From IMG/VR virus record IMGVR_UViG_3300037882_003354, positions 248,001 to 312,000 of that record: a stretch of 64,000 nucleotides of DNA; one strand, written 5' to 3'. Of this stretch, positions 50,488-61,488 are shown piece after piece (position 1 is the stretch's first letter; every line of letters starts with the position of its first letter). The notes beneath the pieces were generated by a model that was not told the DNA's origin, made no database searches, and worked only from the letters and a program-made list of their open reading frames with translations. The position numbers and the translations under genes were made by a program.

Positions 50488-50564
50488 ACGGCCATACCGG
50501 AACGCTCTTCTAAAGCGTAGTACCGTAATTGGAGTCAATGTGGGTTCGAGTCCCGCTGGCCGTA
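50488..50564 (+). tRNA. tRNA-Arg(TCT)-like element lacking a D arm
   Basis: Acceptor ACGGCCA/TGGCCGT; anticodon arm ACGCT-CTTCTAA-AGCGT; T arm GTGGG-TTCGAGT-CCCGC; only 7 nt where the D arm should be. Confidence 0.65.
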
Positions 50565-50609
50565 CAAAATACTTTCGAACAGCTGAATCAACACAATAAC
50601 CAACAAATC

Positions 50610-51389
50610 ATGAGTAGAAAACTAACCATCATAACTAGAACATGCGGCAGAGTATTTGCCATTCACGGAAGCCGATACATTGACCGAACCAAGGCCGAAA
50701 TTATCAACACCTGCCTCAGCAGTCTGGTCCACAGCATCAACCGGGTGCAAGGACATGAGATTGAGTTGTATGTGCTGGACGATCACAGTGACGATGCTGT
50801 GACGGCAGACATCAAGACCATATTGTCCAAGTGCAAATTTCCCACAGAGTTCATACCAGTTGTGGACGGCACTGGCGCCAGCCACACCTGTTTCAAGGTG
50901 TACGACCTGGTGGAAAAACACGCCACTGACCTCTGGTTGCACGTGGAGGATGATTATCTGCACGTGCCCGAATCCATTCAGGACATGATTGACACGGTGG
51001 ATCACTTGGAGGTCAATACTGGACGAATGATTGCCATCAATCCACACGATGATCCGCACCGCTACTCCAGCCAAATTTATGAAAGCATCCTGCTGTACGG
51101 CCCCGAGCGGCATTATCGCACGGTCAAACACAGCACATACACCTGCCTGGCCAGTCGTGCCATTTACGACACCTATCGAGATCTCTTCCAGGAATCGGCA
51201 GAGTGGATACTCAGACGTGGTGAAGACGAGCACATCAATCGGGTGTGGAGCAAGCCTGATGTCATGATGTTCAGCCCCATACCCAGTGTGGCCCTGCATT
51301 TGGCAGACGAAATGAGTCGAGATCCTTACCTGGACATTGACCAACTATGGAACAGTGTGCCTGAACTCTGGAGGACGGATCATGAGTAA
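50610..51389 (+). CDS. GT-A (family 2-like) glycosyltransferase
   Basis: YVLDDHS, WLHVEDDY, SVALH; start re-picked to MSRKL. Confidence 0.72.
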   Translation: MSRKLTIITRTCGRVFAIHGSRYIDRTKAEIINTCLSSLVHSINRVQGHEIELYVLDDHSDDAVTADIKTILSKCKFPTEFIPVVDGTGASHTCFKVYDLVEKHATDLWLHVEDDYLHVPESIQDMIDTVDHLEVNTGRMIAINPHDDPHRYSSQIYESILLYGPERHYRTVKHSTYTCLASRAIYDTYRDLFQESAEWILRRGEDEHINRVWSKPDVMMFSPIPSVALHLADEMSRDPYLDIDQLWNSVPELWRTDHE

Positions 51390-52206
51390 TCGAACATTTC
51401 TTCATGCTGGCACTTTTGGCGACACCATTTATGCCCTGAATGTCATCAAGTTACTGGGCGGCGGCGATCTTTACATCGAATTAAATGGCATGGATGCTCT
51501 GGCACGGAAAATGTGGGGCGGTGGTGATGCAGGGGATCACAGAGGCAGATACACTCAACAAGACATTGATTTTATCCTGCCCTTGCTTGAAAAACAAAGT
51601 TACATCAACCAGGTGAAGATCTGGAACGGGGAACACATAGACCATGATCTCAGGGATCACTATAAATTTTGGGCCAAGAGGGAGGGAAAAATAGAAAACT
51701 GGATGGGCAACCAAACAGAAACCTATGCAATCGCCTGCGGCTTGGACATACACCAGCACAGACAGGACCTCTTGATCAATCCCTGGTTGGACAACATTGA
51801 TCCGGTGTCAATTCCAGGTAAACCCATCATTCTCAATCGCACACATCGACACATCAGACGCGACACTTTCAACATGCAGTTGACTAATGATCAATGTGAT
51901 CACTGGATCAAGGAAGACAGTTTGCTGGACATGGCGGTGTTTGTGGGCGCTCCACAGGAGCATGCAGAATTTTGTGAACAATATGCATGTGATATCCAAT
52001 ACCGACCAGTGACTGACATGCTGGAAATGGCGCAGCTGATAAAAGGATCCGAACAGTTTATCGGAAACCAGAGCATGGCATTGAGCCTGGCCATAGCACT
52101 GGGTAAAACTTTTTGGTGTGAAATTCGGGTGGATTACGAAGATATAAAAACACCACACGGATATGGCGACGTCTGGTTCCCCAGGGCCAATGGTCATTAT
52201 TTTTAA
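51382..52206 (+). CDS. GT9-like (heptosyltransferase-like) glycosyltransferase
   Basis: HAGTFGDTIYAL; MLEMAQLIKGSEQFIGNQSMALSLAIALGK. Confidence 0.65.
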   Translation: MSNRTFLHAGTFGDTIYALNVIKLLGGGDLYIELNGMDALARKMWGGGDAGDHRGRYTQQDIDFILPLLEKQSYINQVKIWNGEHIDHDLRDHYKFWAKREGKIENWMGNQTETYAIACGLDIHQHRQDLLINPWLDNIDPVSIPGKPIILNRTHRHIRRDTFNMQLTNDQCDHWIKEDSLLDMAVFVGAPQEHAEFCEQYACDIQYRPVTDMLEMAQLIKGSEQFIGNQSMALSLAIALGKTFWCEIRVDYEDIKTPHGYGDVWFPRANGHYF

Positions 52207-52229
52207 CAGTGATTGATAAAAGGATTAAC

Positions 52230-53072
52230 ATGAGCAAGAATTTAGTTTTAGGAGCCGCTTTCGGCTATGGCGTGGAAAAAGTCAAACCATTCGTTCTGTC
52301 ACTGCGCAGACACTATGATGGTATCATTGTGTTTGTGGTTGAGCATGTGACTGATGAATTGGCTGAATTTTATCAGGAGCATGACATTTACACCTGTGTG
52401 CCCGAAGGTCCAGTCAATCGCGGATATGCCAATGTTGATAGATTCAGGTATTATCTGGACTGCCTGGAAAACTTTGACGACATTGACAACGTCATGCTGA
52501 CCGACATTCGTGATGTGGTGTTTCAAAGCAATCCATTTGATCACTATCCCAAACACGATATTGAATTATTTGCTGAACCGGAAGTGTTTGGCAAGTGCAA
52601 TCATAATGGTCCTTGGTATTCAGGATTATACGGTGCACAGCAGCTGGACAAGATCAAAGATGAATACGTGCTGTGTGCTGGCACCACCCTGGGCAAGTTT
52701 GACACCATGGTGCAATACATCACAGTTTTGATTGAAGAAATTGCCAAGTTGGAACAGGCAGGCCTGGCACATGGCACCTGCGATCAGGCTGTGCACAATC
52801 ACATTGTTTATACCGGAAGGTTTTCTGATTACCGAATCAATCATAACGGTCAAGGCCTGGTGGCCACCATGCACCATAGCAAGACACTGACATTCGATCG
52901 ACAGGGACGCATGTTAAATCATGACGGCTCGCCCACACCAGTGGTGCATCAATATGATCGGTGTGGTGCCATGAGTGTGGTTTTTCTTAAAAACGCGCTG
53001 GGGCTGACAGGCAAGGGCATTCGAACAGCCGCGGAGTATGCCGCAAATAATTTTTTCGAACATGATTTGTAA
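52230..53072 (+). CDS. Putative GT-A glycosyltransferase
   Basis: LTDIRDVVFQSNPF, LCAGT, DQAVHN, VVHQYDR. Confidence 0.65.
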   Translation: MSKNLVLGAAFGYGVEKVKPFVLSLRRHYDGIIVFVVEHVTDELAEFYQEHDIYTCVPEGPVNRGYANVDRFRYYLDCLENFDDIDNVMLTDIRDVVFQSNPFDHYPKHDIELFAEPEVFGKCNHNGPWYSGLYGAQQLDKIKDEYVLCAGTTLGKFDTMVQYITVLIEEIAKLEQAGLAHGTCDQAVHNHIVYTGRFSDYRINHNGQGLVATMHHSKTLTFDRQGRMLNHDGSPTPVVHQYDRCGAMSVVFLKNALGLTGKGIRTAAEYAANNFFEHDL

Positions 53073-53658: not shown

Positions 53659-54198
53659 ATGTCACATCAAGCACAAATAGATTATTGTCTCTGGGTAAAG
53701 AACAAATTCCCAGAATTTTTTAAAAACACACGAGTGGTTGATTTCGGGTCCTTGGACATCAACGGCAGCAACCGGCGTTTCTTTGACAATTGTGAGTACA
53801 CTGGTTTAGACATTGGTGCTGGCAACAATGTGGACATTGTCACCAGGGCACACGAATATCATGCCCCGGATGCACACTACGATGTGGTGGTTTCTACAGA
53901 AATGTTTGAACATGACAAATACCTGCATCTCAGTCTGCCCAACATGGTCAGGGTACTGAGACCCGGCGGCCTGTTTTTCTGGACATGTGCAACCACAGGC
54001 AGGCATGAGCATGGGACTAGGAGAACAGAACCTTCTGCATCTCCGTTCACATCGCAAGCAGACGATGGCTGGGATGACTTCTACGAAAATGTAGACCAAG
54101 CCAAGGTCAGACAAATATTAGACATCGATGCTCTGTTCAGCGAGTATGCATTTGATGTTCTGGGATATGACATCAGATTTTATGGAATAAAAAAATAA
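53659..54198 (+). CDS. Class I SAM-dependent methyltransferase
   Basis: VVDFGSLDING, YTGLDI, DVVVSTEMFEHD, LRPGG. Confidence 0.88.
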   Translation: MSHQAQIDYCLWVKNKFPEFFKNTRVVDFGSLDINGSNRRFFDNCEYTGLDIGAGNNVDIVTRAHEYHAPDAHYDVVVSTEMFEHDKYLHLSLPNMVRVLRPGGLFFWTCATTGRHEHGTRRTEPSASPFTSQADDGWDDFYENVDQAKVRQILDIDALFSEYAFDVLGYDIRFYGIKK

Positions 54199-54209
54199 TC
54201 AAAAAGCAG

Positions 54210-54238
54210 TCGACAGCGGCAGCAGCCGACTGTATACT
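54210..54238 (+). promoter_or_regulatory. sigma70-type promoter for the tRNA cluster
   Basis: TCGACA-17 nt-TATACT, embedded in a CAGTCG/CGACTG inverted repeat. Confidence 0.65.
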
Positions 54239-54275
54239 ATACGTCATAGTATTGAAACAAATTAGTGTGTTATAC

Positions 54276-54452: not shown

Positions 54453-54540
54453 GGAAGATTGGCAGAGTGGCCGATTGCGTCAGTCTTGAAAACTGAAGAC
54501 CCCAACGGGTCCGTGAGTTCGAATCTCACATCTTCCTCCA
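54453..54540 (+). tRNA. tRNA-Ser(TGA)
   Basis: TCAGT-CTTGAAA-ACTGA, long variable arm, CCA. Confidence 0.92.
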
Positions 54541-54542
54541 AG

Positions 54543-54571
54543 TTGACATGAGCAGCGACCGGCTGTACAAT
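54543..54571 (+). promoter_or_regulatory. sigma70-type promoter
   Basis: TTGACA-17 nt-TACAAT directly before tRNA-Lys. Confidence 0.8.
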
Positions 54572-54579
54572 CAGATCAT

Positions 54580-54655
54580 GGGACGATAGCTCAGTTGGTA
54601 GAGCAGTAGACTTTTAATTTATTGGCCGTGGGATCGTGCCCCACTCGTCCCACCA
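54580..54655 (+). tRNA. tRNA-Lys(TTT) with variant T loop
   Basis: GTAGA-CTTTTAA-TTTAT; T loop ATCGTGC; CCA. Confidence 0.88.
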
Positions 54656-54660
54656 TATTA

Positions 54661-54761
54661 AAACACATTCAACGGCAACCGGGATACCTAGCAACTGGAC
54701 GCAGGGGCTATCCAAATAGTAGGGCACTACAGCCGAAAGCTAGGACTAGAGTGTGTTTCCA
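54661..54761 (+). ncRNA. Candidate structured RNA of about 100 nt
   Basis: 10-bp closing stem AAACACATTC/GAGTGTGTTT followed by CCA; inner CCTAGC/GCTAGG helix; strand inferred from context. Confidence 0.5.
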
Positions 54762-54764
54762 TAT

Positions 54765-55010
54765 GGTGGATTAATTGTGTTGTCATGGAAAATGGCTGTG
54801 TTCACCAGCCCAGTGTTAAGAGATCAATTGGGGGAGTGCCGGCTTCGATCATGATCATAGATCATGGTTCAACCCAATCTCAACGGAGACGACGAATCCT
54901 GGACCACACAGTCCGGGCAATAAGCGTCCGGGGAAAGAAAAAATATTTCCATCCCACAAACGACAGCAGGGCGATTGCTGTTCATAATATGACAACACAA
55001 TTAATCCACC
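54765..55010 (+). ncRNA. Candidate 246-nt structured RNA
   Basis: Perfect 22-bp terminal inverted repeat plus at least five internal helices; strand inferred from context. Confidence 0.65.
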
Positions 55011-55025
55011 TGGCAAGATACACGT

Positions 55026-55033
55026 TATAAATA
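55026..55033 (+). promoter_or_regulatory. T4-type late promoter TATAAATA upstream of tRNA-Ser
   Basis: Exact match flanked by CACGT/ACGTG. Confidence 0.5.
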
Positions 55034-55053
55034 CACGTGAAGAACAATGAACT

Positions 55054-55141
55054 GGATAGTTGGCCGAGTGGTTAAGGCAACGGTTTGCTAAACCGTCGCT
55101 CCGAAAGGGGCGCATAGGTTCGAATCCTATACTATCCGCCA
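55054..55141 (+). tRNA. tRNA-Ser(GCT)
   Basis: ACGGT-TTGCTAA-ACCGT, long variable arm, G73, CCA. Confidence 0.93.
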
Positions 55142-55151
55142 AATTTATCCT

Positions 55152-55227
55152 GGGTCCTTAACTCAGCCGGTAGAGTGTCTGCCTTAAAGGCAGAATGTCG
55201 TCAGTTCGAACCTGGCAGGACCCACCA
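55152..55227 (+). tRNA. Class I tRNA with anticodon TAA (nominally Leu)
   Basis: TCTGC-CTTAAAG-GCAGA; 5-nt variable loop ATGTC; A73, CCA. Confidence 0.8.
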
Positions 55228-55233
55228 ACACAT

Positions 55234-55315
55234 GCATCAGTGTCAGATTGGGAATGAAGCGGTCTGCAAAACCGCTCCGAAAGGGAAGTAGGTTCGATTC
55301 CTACCTGATGCTCCA
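55234..55315 (+). tRNA. tRNA-Cys(GCA) with long variable arm
   Basis: GCGGT-CTGCAAA-ACCGC; U73; variable region TCCGAAAGGGAA. Confidence 0.88.
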
Positions 55316-55338
55316 ATTAATTTTACCACTTGCCACTG

Positions 55339-55367
55339 TTGACGCATAACTAAGATATGTATACACT
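55339..55367 (+). promoter_or_regulatory. sigma70-type promoter
   Basis: TTGACG-17 nt-TACACT. Confidence 0.65.
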
Positions 55368-55373
55368 TTATTC

Positions 55374-55484
55374 ACGGTTGTGAGTGGAATTGGCAGACCT
55401 CCAAAAGAATCGTTGTATGATTTGAGGGATGGGGCAGAGTTATAAACATCGCCTTTGTAGGTTCGAGACCTACCAACCGTACCA
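55374..55484 (+). ncRNA. 111-nt tRNA-like element with expanded anticodon/variable region
   Basis: ACGGTTG/CAACCGT-A-CCA; Leu-type D loop GGAATTGGCAGAC; T arm GTAGG-TTCGAGA-CCTAC. Confidence 0.7.
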
Positions 55485-55527
55485 AAAATAAAAATAATAA
55501 TAATAACAATAACAACATATATCATTT

Positions 55528-56349
55528 ATGATCATAGATTGCTTTACATTTTTTAACGAGCTGGATGTGCTGGAGGGTAGATTGGAATATCTGTATGACA
55601 CAGTGGATTATTTTGTCATTGTGGAAGCCGATATAACACACAGTGGTGCTGCCAAGCCCATGCAATATGCAGAAAACATGCGTCGGTACCACAAGTATTC
55701 AAAGAAAATATTGTACATGCCCGTGTCCATTGATCCCAGTCAGTACAATCTTGATTACCGGCCTGCGACATTTGAACCCACTGCACCACAATGGAGTGTG
55801 GAAAATCTGCAAAGGAATCACATAGCCAAGGCCTTGGCGCTGTTTCCTGATGATGCCATGGTGGGCATAAGTGATGCGGATGAAATCCCCAGCAAATCAG
55901 CCATTGAACTGGCCAAGTACATCCTGGGTTCTGAAACAGAGGCCTGCTGTCTGGAGCAAGAGATGTTTTATTATAATTTCCGCCAGCAGGCCACCATTGG
56001 ATGGATACCTGGTGCCCTGGTCACCAACCGATTTGCCAAGCAAGTGTCTCCGCAGGGAGTTAGAAATCAAGCCATGTGGGGTCAGTTAACTCGAATTCCA
56101 CAGGGTGGCTGGCACCTGAGCTATTGGGGATCGCCTGAAGACATTTCGTATAAAATTAAAAATTTTGCACATCAAGAACTAAACAATGCTGAATTCACTA
56201 ACATTGATAACATTCAACAACGTATAGCAACAGGGCGAGACCCGTTCGACCGTGCACCTATGGTGCATGTGGATCCCATGAGTTTGCCCAAATTGCCACA
56301 CGAAGTGGTTGGTATTTTTGGCAAAGATTTTAAAAATTTTACACGCTGA
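55528..56349 (+). CDS. GT17 (MGAT3-like) glycosyltransferase
   Basis: MIIDCFTFFNELDVL, FVIVEA, QRN, ISDADEIP, GGWHLSY. Confidence 0.85.
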   Translation: MIIDCFTFFNELDVLEGRLEYLYDTVDYFVIVEADITHSGAAKPMQYAENMRRYHKYSKKILYMPVSIDPSQYNLDYRPATFEPTAPQWSVENLQRNHIAKALALFPDDAMVGISDADEIPSKSAIELAKYILGSETEACCLEQEMFYYNFRQQATIGWIPGALVTNRFAKQVSPQGVRNQAMWGQLTRIPQGGWHLSYWGSPEDISYKIKNFAHQELNNAEFTNIDNIQQRIATGRDPFDRAPMVHVDPMSLPKLPHEVVGIFGKDFKNFTR

Positions 56350-56368
56350 CACCTGGAGTAATTAACAC

Positions 56369-58021
56369 ATGATCATAGATTGCTTTACATTTTTTAACGA
56401 ACTTGATCTGCTGGAAGGCAGGTTGGAATATCTGTATGATACAGTGGATTATTTTGTCATTGTGGAAGCTGATGTAACACACAGTGGCCAACCTAAACCA
56501 CTCAACTATCTGGAAAATATTGCAAGGTATCACAAATTTTCTGATAAAATTCTGTACTTTCCAGTGCACATTGATGTCAGCGCATACGATTGGAGTGTCA
56601 AACATGCTGCAGATGACCTAACATCACCACACTGGCAAGTGGAAAACCTGCAGCGCAATCACATAGCCACAGCGTTGAAATTATTTGATCCACAAGCATG
56701 GATCATGATTGGAGATCTGGATGAAATACCCAACCGTGATGTGATCCAGTATGCAATATCATGTGTAAATGACACCCAGCCCATGTGTACTTTCAGGCAG
56801 GACATGTTCTATTATAATTTCAATCAAAAGCAAATTGGCTCCTGGCCGGGCACAGTGGTGACCACCAATCAATACGTGATTAATCATGGCCCACAACAGA
56901 TCAGAATGTGGCGATGGGGCTTTGGAGTCACGTGCGGCTGGCACCTGAGCTACTGGGGTTCACCAGAAAAGATTAAACTTAAACTGGAAAATTTTGCACA
57001 TCATGAATATAACACAAGTGAGTTTACTGATGTGGATAAAATAGCAGAACGAATTAAAGCAGGCAAGGATATATTTGATCGTGGTGATCACTGCCGATGT
57101 ATTCCAGTGGATCGATCTTCACTGCCTGCAGATTTATTGAGAGTATTCGGAAAATACGAAATTATAAATGTTGATAACACAGTCCACCAACCTAAGAATT
57201 TAGTGCTGGGAATTGCACTGGGCTACGGTGTGGACGAAATAAAGAATTTTATTTTAAGTTTTAGGGCGTACAACCAACGGGATTGCATCAACCTGATCAT
57301 GGACCAGTCCACACTGGATAAAACCCAGAATTTTTTAAAGTCACAAAATGTGGACATCACGTTGTTTGATCTGCATGATGCAATGGGCACCACACCAGTG
57401 AACAATCTCAGATTTGAACAATATGGAAAGATTATCACTCAGGGAACATATAAAAATATTTTATCAACTGACATTCGGGATGTGATATTCCAGAAAGATC
57501 CCTTTGTAAACCTGCCCGACCATCCCTACCTGTACTTGTTTCAAGAAGACAGTGGTGTCCCCATTGGTGAAGAAGTATACAATTCATTGTGGATAAAAAA
57601 TGCATATGGTGATCAAATACTAGATCAAATAAAAGATCAATTGGTCATCTGCGTGGGCACAGTCATGGCCAGCGCACCAAAGATGTTGGAGTATGTGGAT
57701 TTCGTCACTGCTGAATTAAAAAAATTCAAGGAAAGATCCCCGGATGTCTGGAGAGCCCATGCGTTTGAACAGGCGCCGGGCATGTATTTGGGTTATGCAA
57801 AAGAACAAAAGATTCAGGGCCTGGAAATAAAACCCAGCGGACACATTGTGGGCACCATAGGACTGTCCCTGACACACCACCTGGCCCGTGATCAAATAGA
57901 AGGTCGAGGGGACGGATTCGTCTACGTGAACGGTCTAGTGCCGGAGATAATCCACCAATATGACCGACACAAAGAGCTGGTGGCATTCTTCAATCAGAAA
58001 TACAGCATGCCTGAGTCCTAA
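56369..58021 (+). CDS. GT17 glycosyltransferase fused to a second GT-A-like domain
   Basis: N half paralogous to 55528; C half (STDIRDVIFQKDPF, IIHQYDR) paralogous to 52230. Confidence 0.85.
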   Translation: MIIDCFTFFNELDLLEGRLEYLYDTVDYFVIVEADVTHSGQPKPLNYLENIARYHKFSDKILYFPVHIDVSAYDWSVKHAADDLTSPHWQVENLQRNHIATALKLFDPQAWIMIGDLDEIPNRDVIQYAISCVNDTQPMCTFRQDMFYYNFNQKQIGSWPGTVVTTNQYVINHGPQQIRMWRWGFGVTCGWHLSYWGSPEKIKLKLENFAHHEYNTSEFTDVDKIAERIKAGKDIFDRGDHCRCIPVDRSSLPADLLRVFGKYEIINVDNTVHQPKNLVLGIALGYGVDEIKNFILSFRAYNQRDCINLIMDQSTLDKTQNFLKSQNVDITLFDLHDAMGTTPVNNLRFEQYGKIITQGTYKNILSTDIRDVIFQKDPFVNLPDHPYLYLFQEDSGVPIGEEVYNSLWIKNAYGDQILDQIKDQLVICVGTVMASAPKMLEYVDFVTAELKKFKERSPDVWRAHAFEQAPGMYLGYAKEQKIQGLEIKPSGHIVGTIGLSLTHHLARDQIEGRGDGFVYVNGLVPEIIHQYDRHKELVAFFNQKYSMPES

Positions 58022-61411: not shown

Positions 61412-61488
61412 GGGACGGCAGCTTGAGCATGAGGAGCACGGGTCTCATAAACCCGAGGTAATGGGTGCGAATCCCATACGTCCTACCA
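61412..61488 (+). tRNA. tRNA-CAT (Ile2 or elongator Met), divergent D and T loops
   Basis: CGGGT-CTCATAA-ACCCG; T loop TGCGAAT; D loop lacks GG; CCA. Confidence 0.72.

What the first reader, a model, noticed from the sequence alone, without database searches (positions are those of the whole stretch)
54765..55010. Unannotated 246-nt RNA closed by a perfect 22-bp stem in the tRNA cluster
Seen: GGTGGATTAATTGTGTTGTCAT (54765-54786) is the exact reverse complement of 54989-55010. Inside: GGCTG/CAGCC (54794-54810), an interrupted helix GTT..GAGA..TTGGG/CCCAA-TCTC-AAC (54815-54884) capped by CATGATC/GATCATG, CCTGGAC/GTCCGGG (54898-54917), GGAAA/TTTCC, and ACAGCA/TGCTGT (54963-54981). It has no tRNA or tmRNA ends. 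Inference: a functional multibranch RNA. Options include a 6S-like RNAP decoy (the phage also encodes omega), a retron msr-msd-like RNA or decoy (long a1/a2-type repeats with a G right after the stem, though no RT in this window), or a defence sponge.
Basis: partly seen in the sequence, partly recalled or inferred. Interest (0 to 1): 0.72.

Follow-up and report, generated by a model that had tools for sequence, protein, structure and literature searches.

The report
New self-pairing RNA in phage tRNA arrays
The 246-base element is a real, transcribed member of a previously uncatalogued family of folded RNAs in the tRNA gene arrays of uncultivated freshwater phages, and one of its loops looks built to pair with a second copy of the same RNA.

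Summary
The 22-nt arms at 54765-54786 and 54989-55010 are perfectly complementary (23 bp with a closing G.U), and the copy is unique in the 322.5-kb phage genome.

The element is not a MITE, retron, 6S, Y RNA, tRNA or tmRNA, and no Rfam 15 family matches it. It is a divergent member of a structured RNA family that I collected from IMG/VR and JGI freshwater contigs: 32 sequences, plus 10 close relatives of the window copy. Members are 195-282 nt, occur once per phage record, lie on the tRNA strand, and almost always sit inside the tRNA array.

Covariation is strong: 95% of cells are paired, 35 of 41 pairs show changes on both sides, and 0 of 500 shuffles reach this.

The architecture is a long closing helix P1, a five-way junction with near-invariant A-rich joiners, and helices P2, P3, P4-P6 and P7.

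The apical P3 loop always carries a palindrome of 6 nt or more. There are 11 kinds; the window has GCCGGC. This is the published signature of a symmetric kissing loop between two molecules.

Three lake metatranscriptomes hold contigs over the interior (about 54787-54995) but none over the flanking genes.

The biological role is unknown. My best reading is a stable RNA cut from the tRNA transcript that pairs with itself.

The parts
54765..54787 (+). P1, 5' arm of the closing helix (22 perfect pairs plus G54787.U54988)
   Evidence: P1 covaries: 17 of 23 pairs changed on both sides in 32 sequences, and 16 of 23 in the 11-sequence window subgroup with 97.6% of cells paired. It is not covered by the RNA contigs of runs X16 and X17.
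54788..54793 (+). J1/2 joiner GAAAAU. With G54787 it forms the family's invariant GGAAAA.
   Evidence: Invariant columns in alignments A2 and A5.
54794..54810 (+). P2 hairpin GGCUG-UGUUCAC-CAGCC
   Evidence: All 4 modelled pairs covary across the family (helix 2).
54811..54819 (+). J2/3 joiner CAGUGUUAA (UAAUGCAC in the main group of the family)
54820..54881 (+). P3 domain: outer helix GAGAU/AUCUC and UGGG/CCCA enclosing hairpins P3a and P3b
   Evidence: In the family, all 6 P3 pairs covary, with up to 21 of 32 sequences changed on both sides at a single pair (helix 3).
54833..54846 (+). P3a apical hairpin with the palindrome GCCGGC at 54838-54843, the proposed symmetric kissing loop L3
   Evidence: all 18 distinct L3 loops hold a palindrome of 6 nt or more, in 11 kinds.
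54847..54869 (+). P3b, a 10-bp hairpin specific to the window subgroup
   Evidence: The sequence is replaced by other hairpin-forming sequences in L283, L591-L594 and L602. MAFFT aligns it poorly, so the counts are low (helix 7).
54884..54930 (+). P4-P6 arm: CGGA/UCCG, a conserved internal loop (GACGACGAAUC opposite AAUAAGCG), and the P6 hairpin 54898-54917 with loop CACACA
   Evidence: Natural variant G54915>A turns U.G into U-A. The main group has the equivalent ACGAAAG / AUAAG loop.
54931..54955 (+). Variable-region hairpin GGGA..GAAA / UUUC..UCCC, absent from the main group
   Evidence: Length and sequence vary among relatives.
54956..54961 (+). Joiner ACAAAC (UAAAAGCAAAC in the main group)
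   Evidence: AAAC is invariant in A5, and the preceding C nearly so. The motif is conserved in A2.
54962..54982 (+). P7 hairpin with loop GGGCGAU
   Evidence: 100% of cells paired and 5 of 8 pairs changed on both sides in A5. All 6 pairs covary in A4 (helix 5).
54983..54987 (+). J7/1 joiner CAUAA (family motif CCAUAAC)
54988..55010 (+). P1, 3' arm
   Evidence: As for the 5' arm. The RNA contig of X17 ends at 54995, inside this arm.
54787..54995 (+). Stretch represented in metatranscriptome contigs, taken as the abundant RNA species
   Evidence: X16 covers 54787-54948 (depth 29), X17 covers 54789-54995 (depth 30), and X15 covers 54681-54943 (depth 5). A sequencing adapter is joined at 54786/54787. 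The RNA runs show no coverage over 53694-54257 or 55292-56400, where DNA run X1 is even at about 22x.
54543..54571 (+). Sigma-70-like promoter match (TTGACA, 17 nt, TACAAT; 11 of 12) upstream of tRNA-Lys. It may be the start of the transcript that carries the element.
   Evidence: This is a consensus match only.
54650..54771 (+). Upstream 'type A' inter-tRNA spacer hairpin. Its 5' arm starts in the CCACCA end of tRNA-Lys, and its 3' arm ends in the GGUGG that opens P1.
   Evidence: I2. The arm motif is found in 95 IMG/VR stretches, typically between a tRNA 3' end and the next tRNA.

Best explanation
The element is the window phage's single copy of a structured non-coding RNA family that lives in the tRNA arrays of uncultivated freshwater phages.

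Shown:
- It lies on the tRNA strand, between tRNA-Lys and tRNA-Ser.
- Its helices P1, P2, P3, P6 and P7 are kept by compensatory changes, while the joiners of a five-way junction are almost invariant.
- RNA from its interior is present in three lake metatranscriptomes in which the neighbouring protein genes are silent.

Inferred:
- It is transcribed with the tRNAs, possibly from the sigma-70-like promoter at 54543-54571.
- The long helix P1 pairs the sequence after the upstream tRNA (or spacer) with the sequence before the next tRNA. It serves as a closing and processing stem, like the stems that flank rRNAs.
- A double-strand-specific host nuclease followed by trimming (or another cut at the top of P1) releases a core of about 205 nt that begins GGAAAAU.
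- The core folds around the conserved A-rich junction. It pairs with a second copy through the self-complementary loop L3 (GCCGGC here), giving a symmetric homodimer.
- In many relatives a second self-complementary loop, L6, could allow larger assemblies.

The downstream biological role is not known. The most likely area is translation or tRNA biology during infection, by analogy with ROOL and GOLLD, the other phage RNAs found near tRNA islands.
For: Family and covariation:
- nhmmer leads L197 and L245, then 36 IMG/VR loci found with a 5' motif, and members with unrelated P1 sequences found with a 3' motif.
- RNAalifold finds 27 of 41 pairs with compensatory changes.
- On the 32-sequence alignment, 95.0% of cells are paired against 74.8% when shuffled. 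35 of 41 pairs change on both sides, 0 of 500 shuffles reach this, and controls with the partner columns slid by 1-3 positions give 34-52%.
- In the window subgroup P1 is 97.6% paired with 16 of 23 pairs changed on both sides, and P7 is 100% paired.

Strand: U.G pairs occur at fixed P1 positions. The model scores 118 bits on + against 30.6 on -.

Context: B lies on the same strand as every tRNA called in all 34 loci, and tRNAs flank it directly in most. There is one copy per record in 24 of 24 records.

Expression: with coordinates as given under parts. The variant G54915>A keeps a pair.

Self-pairing: all 18 distinct L3 loops have a palindrome of 6 nt or more, about 3.9 are expected by chance, and there are 11 kinds whose central tetranucleotides are 8 different self-complementary words. 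The same signature was used and confirmed by cryo-EM for OLE and GOLLD.

No dedicated protein partner: the only proteins shared by G000, G054 and G055 but not found in G005 or G006 are the large terminase, a UvsW-like helicase and an endolysin.
Against: - No experiment shows dimerisation. Complex prediction does not accept RNA-only jobs.
- In the window's own minimum-free-energy fold the palindrome is partly inside a weak 5-bp stem.
- The palindrome could instead be the site of a dimeric protein, although 11 different sequences argue against sequence-specific recognition.
- The end at 54787 could be a reverse-transcriptase stop or a fragmentation bias at a 23-bp helix rather than a true RNA end. 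Run X15 has a contig that runs through the 5' arm.
- The phages encode no RNase III, so the processing enzyme is assumed to come from the host.
- A cut at the top of the helix is not the usual mid-helix RNase III pattern.
- The RNA is missing from close PolB relatives with large tRNA arrays, so it is dispensable for the array itself.
- Part of the family was retrieved with patterns that fix P1 or P2 sequence, which inflates the apparent conservation of those parts.
Confidence: 0.6

Rival explanations
1. It is a purely cis-acting spacer. The structure exists only to organise folding and cleavage of the polycistronic tRNA precursor, and the excised piece is a by-product with no function of its own.
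For: It always sits between tRNAs. P1 pairs tRNA-proximal trailer with leader. The same arrays contain simpler 'type A' hairpin spacers whose conserved arms enclose freely variable interiors of about 7 to 110 nt.
Against: A spacer does not need about 50 near-invariant junction nucleotides, five covarying helices or a loop that stays palindromic through 11 sequence changes. There is only one copy per genome although arrays have many spacers. The interior accumulates to contig depths of 29-30 where neighbouring spacers show none.
Confidence: 0.13
2. It is the RNA partner or decoy of a host protein, for example a sponge for a defence nuclease or a translation factor. The conserved junction is the protein-binding site and the palindromic loop is bound by a dimeric protein.
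For: The conserved single-stranded joiners and the internal loop (ACGAAAG / AUAAG) look like recognition surfaces. No phage protein co-occurs with the RNA, so any partner would come from the host. tRNA-array position is shared with phage counter-defence tRNAs (my own knowledge, not tested here).
Against: There is no direct evidence. A sequence-specific protein site would not tolerate 11 different palindromes.
Confidence: 0.15
3. It is a self-cleaving or otherwise catalytic RNA. The sharp end at 54786/54787, between the P1 5' arm and the invariant GGAAAA, is the product of its own cleavage.
For: It has the ribozyme-like pattern of an invariant junction with variable helices. The same boundary appears in two libraries, and an adapter-joined contig marks it in X17.
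Against: No known ribozyme family matches. The boundary is equally explained by a reverse-transcriptase stop at a 23-bp helix. X15 holds a contig that spans the site.
Confidence: 0.07
4. It is a DNA-level element: a miniature inverted-repeat transposon, or a cruciform used in replication or recombination.
For: It has perfect 22-bp terminal inverted repeats on a 246-bp unit. tRNA neighbours differ between phages, which fits mobility of array modules.
Against: There is no target-site duplication (flanks ..CATAT and TGGCA..). It is single-copy in every record. Fixed U.G pairs would be A.C mismatches on the other strand. Internal hairpins covary. The closest relative L601 already has a mismatch in the arms. 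RNA is detected.
Confidence: 0.02
5. It is a retron-like msr-msd RNA, or a short protein-coding gene (ORF 54785-55030, 81 aa).
For: It has long terminal repeats with a G right after the stem, and an open frame of 81 codons.
Against: There is no reverse transcriptase in three complete or near-complete genomes that carry it. The ORF has no Pfam match. The longest open frame changes strand and phase from member to member.
Confidence: 0.01

Closest known systems
ROOL and GOLLD RNAs (Rfam families; phage and prophage RNAs near tRNA islands that form RNA-only cages)
   Same: All are encoded by phages in or beside tRNA arrays, have multi-helix folds with strong covariation, and have no known protein partner. 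Self-complementary loops covary between different palindromes, which in GOLLD and OLE marks kissing loops between chains.
   Different: There is no sequence or model similarity (no Rfam hit at E <= 10). This RNA is 195-282 nt, against about 580 nt and over 800 nt. It has one closing helix and a five-way junction. Oligomerisation here is inferred, not observed.
T4 rnaC and rnaD (species 1 and 2 stable RNAs in the T4 tRNA cluster)
   Same: They are small stable RNAs of unknown function encoded in a phage tRNA cluster on the tRNA strand. From my own knowledge they are cut out of the tRNA precursor, and species 1 is an RNase III substrate in vitro.
   Different: They are not homologous: the family model scores 5 bits or less on them. 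rnaC ends in a tRNA-like T arm. They have no long closing helix and no palindromic loop.
manA and similar short phage RNA motifs that self-assemble
   Same: These are RNAs under 200 nt, reported in a 2026 preprint to form homo-oligomers from trimers up to a 60-mer. This shows that small RNAs can do what is proposed here.
   Different: This is an unrelated family. manA is in Rfam and did not match, and its genomic context differs.
rRNA processing stems (long helices pairing the sequences that flank 16S and 23S rRNA)
   Same: A covarying helix of about 20 bp or more brings together the two flanks of a stable RNA inside a polycistronic transcript, and is largely absent from the mature species.
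   Different: Here the cargo is a 200-nt RNA in a tRNA operon. The cleaving enzyme and the cleavage sites are not known.

Membership tests
6S RNA | Matches a 6S covariance model | tested here: not met
   cmscan at E <= 10 over 54500-55200 and over two family members gives no 6S hit.
6S RNA | Rod-like double-stranded RNA with a large central bubble that mimics an open promoter | tested here: not met
   The consensus is a closing helix on a five-way junction with four hairpin arms.
6S RNA | Binds RNA polymerase holoenzyme and templates product RNA | not testable with these tools
   Needs biochemistry.
Retron msr-msd | Reverse transcriptase gene next to the RNA | tested here: not met
   PF00078 is absent from G000, G054 and G055 (two complete genomes and one 92% complete) and from two further records.
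Retron msr-msd | Terminal inverted repeats (a1/a2) with a branching G just inside | tested here: inconclusive
   A long terminal helix is followed by an invariant GG, but this shape is not specific to retrons.
MITE or other transposon | Terminal inverted repeats | tested here: met
   22-bp perfect repeats.
MITE or other transposon | Target-site duplication and several dispersed copies | tested here: not met
   The flanks differ. There is one copy in the genome and in each of 24 records.
ROOL / GOLLD | Matches the Rfam model of either family | tested here: not met
ROOL / GOLLD | Phage-encoded, in or beside tRNA islands | tested here: met
ROOL / GOLLD | Homo-oligomer held by kissing loops | tested here: inconclusive
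   The palindrome covariation signature is present. There is no physical test, because complex prediction refuses RNA-only input.
Y RNA / YrlA | Ro60 (TROVE) gene in the genome, and a tRNA-like module in the RNA | tested here: not met
   PF05731 is absent. The only YrlA hit (16.5 bits, gathering score 69) lies on the upstream tRNAs, not on the element. The element has no T arm.
T4 rnaC / rnaD | Sequence and structure homology | tested here: not met
   The family model with filters off scores 5 bits or less over rnaC and rnaD.
tRNA / tmRNA | Cloverleaf, or acceptor plus T arm | tested here: not met
   ARAGORN and Rfam call nothing in 54656-55053.
The new family itself (tRNA-array RNA, 'family B') | P1 closing helix, GGAAAA joiner, P2, P3 with palindromic apex, conserved internal loop, P7, CAUAA(C/U) joiner | tested here: met
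   The window copy matches the model end to end at 118 bits, E 2e-26, and carries each feature.

The most novel reading that the evidence does not exclude
This may be a roughly 200-nt phage RNA that assembles with itself without protein. It would form a symmetric dimer through loop L3. In the many relatives with a second self-complementary loop L6 (GGCC, UGCA, UGAUCA, AGCU) it could form rings, chains or cages. That would make it a minimal, independently evolved counterpart of ROOL and GOLLD in the same genomic niche, perhaps freeing itself from the tRNA transcript by cutting at the top of P1.
Probability: 0.3. Interest if true: 0.85.

Novelty: new variant of a known kind. Interest (0 to 1): 0.7.

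Why it matters
Phage tRNA arrays are usually read as codon-supply or counter-defence cassettes. Yet they repeatedly harbour elaborate RNAs whose function has stayed unknown for decades: T4 species 1 and 2, ROOL and GOLLD.

A third, much smaller family in the same niche, with the same self-pairing signature, suggests that self-assembling RNA is a recurring accessory of phage tRNA operons. At about 200 nt it is far easier to handle for structure work and mutational tests than the 600-800-nt RNAs. It also comes with a ready set of natural loop swaps for testing dimerisation.

The family is also a useful annotation marker for uncultivated freshwater phages.

Tried and rejected
- Rfam at gathering and at E <= 10 thresholds on the window copy and two members: nothing.
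- blastn against 50,697 GenBank phages with the window copy and with a consensus-like member: no match.
- Exact 22-nt arm in IMG/VR: none.
- Neighbouring proteins as anchors for relatives: the methyltransferase gave 1 locus and GT17 gave 80 unrelated loci, none with the element.
- PolB relatives at 79-87% identity: no blastn match in 16 records and no model match in 50, including three with 25-38 tRNAs. The RNA is therefore accessory.
Filtering with the family HMM kept 6 viral members and no bacterial one.
- The 13-nt match CATGATCATAGAT to the start of the two GT17 genes (D3) was judged to be chance: about 0.5 such matches are expected for a 246-nt query in this window.
- The ORF at 54785-55030 was rejected.
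- Retron, Ro/Y RNA and a phage RNase III were rejected by family searches.
- The search for a co-occurring phage protein found only core genes.
- T4 rnaC and rnaD are not homologous.
- The supplement of the IMG/VR structured-RNA catalogue (PMC10690425) is not held, so I could not check whether this family is among its 8,495 unnamed candidates.

Full report
**1. The observation**

The window is bases 248001-312000 of a 322,512-bp IMG/VR phage record with direct terminal repeats. The phage encodes a family-B DNA polymerase, a ClpB-like ATPase and a 2039-aa collagen-repeat fibre.

The arms 54765-54786 and 54989-55010 are perfectly complementary over 22 nt. Nothing within 3 mismatches of the arm occurs elsewhere in the window, where 0.01 matches are expected by chance. 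A G.U pair extends the helix to 23 bp.

The element lies between tRNA-Lys (ends 54655) and tRNA-Ser (starts 55054), in a run of seven tRNA genes on the + strand.

**2. What it is not**

- No Rfam 15 family matches, even at E <= 10.
- The element is single-copy in the genome and has no duplicated target site.
- Its 81-codon ORF has no Pfam match, and the frame is not conserved in relatives.
- GenBank phages hold nothing similar.

**3. Finding relatives**

PolB at 79-87% identity shows that the phage belongs to a large clade of freshwater contigs. However, the element is absent from 50 of these records, including three with 25-38 tRNA genes.

The breakthrough came through the sequence just upstream. 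A 'type A' hairpin spacer has conserved arms, and its 3' arm motif occurs in 95 IMG/VR stretches. In the loci fetched with that motif, nhmmer gave two weak full-length hits to the element. These shared its ends and showed compensated differences in the long stem.

I then collected members in four steps:
- A 5' motif scan gave 36 loci.
- A 3' motif scan, filtered with the family HMM, added members whose P1 has an unrelated sequence. L361 is one example, with a 19-bp helix made of different letters.
- A covariance model built from 27 unique sequences finds exactly one strong hit in each of 24 records. The opposite strand scores far lower.
- A 19-nt motif shared by the window copy and L283 retrieved the window's own subgroup from IMG/VR and JGI metagenomes.

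**4. Architecture and covariation**

From 5' to 3' the family has these elements:
- P1, typically 18-25 bp, often starting at the CCA of the preceding tRNA.
- Joiner GGAAAA(A/U).
- P2 hairpin.
- Joiner UAAUGCAC.. (CAGUG.. in the window subgroup).
- P3 with an apical loop L3.
- Joiner ..CGAGUUG.
- An arm P4-P5-P6, interrupted by a conserved internal loop (ACGAAAG opposite AUAAG; in the window GACGACGAAUC opposite AAUAAGCG).
- Joiner UAAAAGCAAACG.
- P7 hairpin.
- Joiner CCAUAAC.
- P1 3' arm.

The window copy has three extras: hairpin P3b, a longer P3, and a variable-region hairpin.

On 32 distinct sequences, 95.0% of cells are standard pairs, against 74.8% after shuffling and 34-52% when the partner columns are slid by 1-3 positions. 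35 of 41 pairs change on both sides, and no shuffle in 500 reaches the observed values.

In the 11-sequence window subgroup, P1 is 97.6% paired with 16 of 23 pairs changed on both sides. P7 is 100% paired. The closest relative, L601, compensates GGUGG/CCACC to GGUUG/CAACC but also carries one mismatch. The perfection of the window's stem is therefore incidental.

Fixed U.G pairs and the strand asymmetry of model scores place the RNA on the tRNA strand.

**5. The palindromic loop**

In every member the apex of P3 carries a palindrome of at least 6 nt. The 11 kinds are GCCGGC (the window and its subgroup), CUGCAG, CCUGCAGG, CUAGCUAG, CGGCCG, GUCGAC, GUGCAC, UGAUCA, UGUACA, UUCGAA and ACUAGU. All 18 distinct loop sequences have one, where shuffling predicts about 4.

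The outer two letters could be a closing base pair. The central four letters take eight different values, and every one of them is self-complementary. Adjacent nucleotides cannot pair within one chain, so this pattern points to pairing between two chains. The same argument was made, and confirmed by cryo-EM, for OLE and GOLLD.

A second loop, L6, is self-complementary in 20 of the 32 aligned members (GGCC, UGCA, UGAUCA). It is always different from L3 in the same molecule. Another 8 of the 32 have GACG instead. In the window subgroup L6 is AGCU or contains CGCG in several members, but it is CACACA in the window copy.

**6. Expression**

Contigs from three metatranscriptomes of different studies lie on the interior of the element:
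- X16 covers 54787-54948 at depth 29.
- X17 covers 54789-54995 at depth 30.
- X15 covers 54681-54943 at depth 5.

None of the three covers 53694-54257 or 55292-56400. DNA run X1 covers the whole stretch evenly at about 22x. DNA contamination is therefore unlikely.

In X17 a sequencing adapter is joined at 54786/54787. A contig of an L283-like variant also starts there. The boundary is the top of P1, so it is either a true 5' end or a reverse-transcriptase stop at a formed helix.

The natural variants either keep pairs (G54915>A turns U.G into U-A) or fall in loops.

A near-consensus sigma-70 promoter match lies just upstream of tRNA-Lys, and no terminator-like site follows the element.

**7. 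Context and partners**

In all 34 loci the RNA is on the same strand as every tRNA called there, and tRNAs flank it directly in most. Its most frequent neighbours are tRNA-Glu(UUC) on the left and tRNA-Tyr, tRNA-Ser or tRNA-Asp on the right. No protein family recurs beside it.

It occurs in phages of 97, 174 and 322 kb. Their large terminases are only 26-31% identical, and few proteins are detectably shared. The only proteins shared with G054 and G055 but not found in two close relatives that lack the RNA are the terminase, a UvsW-like helicase and an endolysin.

None of these phages encodes a reverse transcriptase, RNase III or Ro60.

**8. Interpretation**

The evidence establishes a new structured RNA family and places the finding in it.

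The mechanism I commit to has three steps. The RNA is transcribed with the tRNAs. The core is then released with the help of the P1 stem. The core then forms a symmetric homodimer through L3. The first step rests on strand, position and RNA contigs. The second rests on the absence of the 5' arm from two RNA libraries. The third rests on palindrome covariation and a published precedent.

The biological purpose is open. The rivals, with my estimates, are a mere processing spacer (0.13), a host-protein decoy or partner (0.15), a ribozyme (0.07), a DNA-level element (0.02), and a retron or protein-coding gene (0.01).

**9. Comparison with known systems**

It works most like ROOL and GOLLD in niche and in self-pairing signature, and like T4 rnaC/rnaD in being a stable RNA inside a tRNA operon. 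It is a member of none of these families.

I could not check whether it is among the unnamed candidates of the IMG/VR structured-RNA survey.

Noticed in passing
window 54650-54771; L182:11154-11268(-); loci L186-L280: A second, simpler repeat class in these tRNA arrays ('type A' spacer). Conserved arms CCAUAUAAAAACACAYU and AGUGUGUUUCUAUAUGGUG, with a fixed A.C mismatch, enclose interiors of about 7 to 110 nt that vary freely and sometimes contain T-arm-like pieces. The 5' arm typically starts in the CCA of one tRNA and the 3' arm typically ends at the next tRNA. The 3' arm motif is found in 95 IMG/VR stretches. It may be a processing hairpin or a recombination module for shuffling tRNA cassettes.
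   Followed up: partly
window 55374-55484: A tRNA-like sequence with acceptor stem ACGGUUG/CAACCGU plus ACCA and a good T arm. ARAGORN and Rfam do not call it at default settings. At a relaxed threshold ARAGORN reads it as tRNA-Leu(GAG) with a 17-nt insert in the anticodon arm.
   Followed up: partly
window 54543-54571 and 54210-54238: Sigma-70-like promoter matches (11 of 12 and 10 of 12) directly upstream of tRNA-Lys and tRNA-Asn. They suggest that host RNA polymerase drives sub-clusters of the array.
   Followed up: no
window 55528-56349 and 56369-58021: Two tandem glycosyltransferase family 17 genes (273 and 550 aa) whose first 119 nt are 92% identical. They sit between parts of the tRNA array.
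   Followed up: partly
window 50488-50564 and 61413-61484: Two tRNA matches by Rfam (40.6 and 29.3 bits) that ARAGORN does not report.
   Followed up: no
genome 45244-45616, minus strand (outside the window): ARAGORN calls a permuted tmRNA with tag peptide AANDDAYLMAA. This was not verified.
   Followed up: no
L182:9863-10373(-), L183:4000-4341, L181:4455-4672: Another conserved non-coding stretch in the tRNA arrays of PolB relatives, 86% identical over 224 nt between two records. It is not called as tRNA and may be a further RNA gene.
   Followed up: no
L179-L182, gaps between tRNAs: Many inter-tRNA gaps of 500-750 nt in relatives hold low-GC ORFs of about 160-220 aa. They resemble homing endonuclease insertions such as T4 segB, but were not tested.
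   Followed up: no
family members with L6 = GACG (L284, L286, L291, L292, L313, L338, L361, L245): When loop L6 is not self-complementary it is almost always GACG. This could pair with the UGUC that precedes the palindrome in L3, in the same molecule or between molecules. This remains unexplained.
   Followed up: partly
window 50529-53072: Three consecutive ORFs of 286-289 aa with no Pfam match, possibly paralogues, upstream of the array.
   Followed up: no
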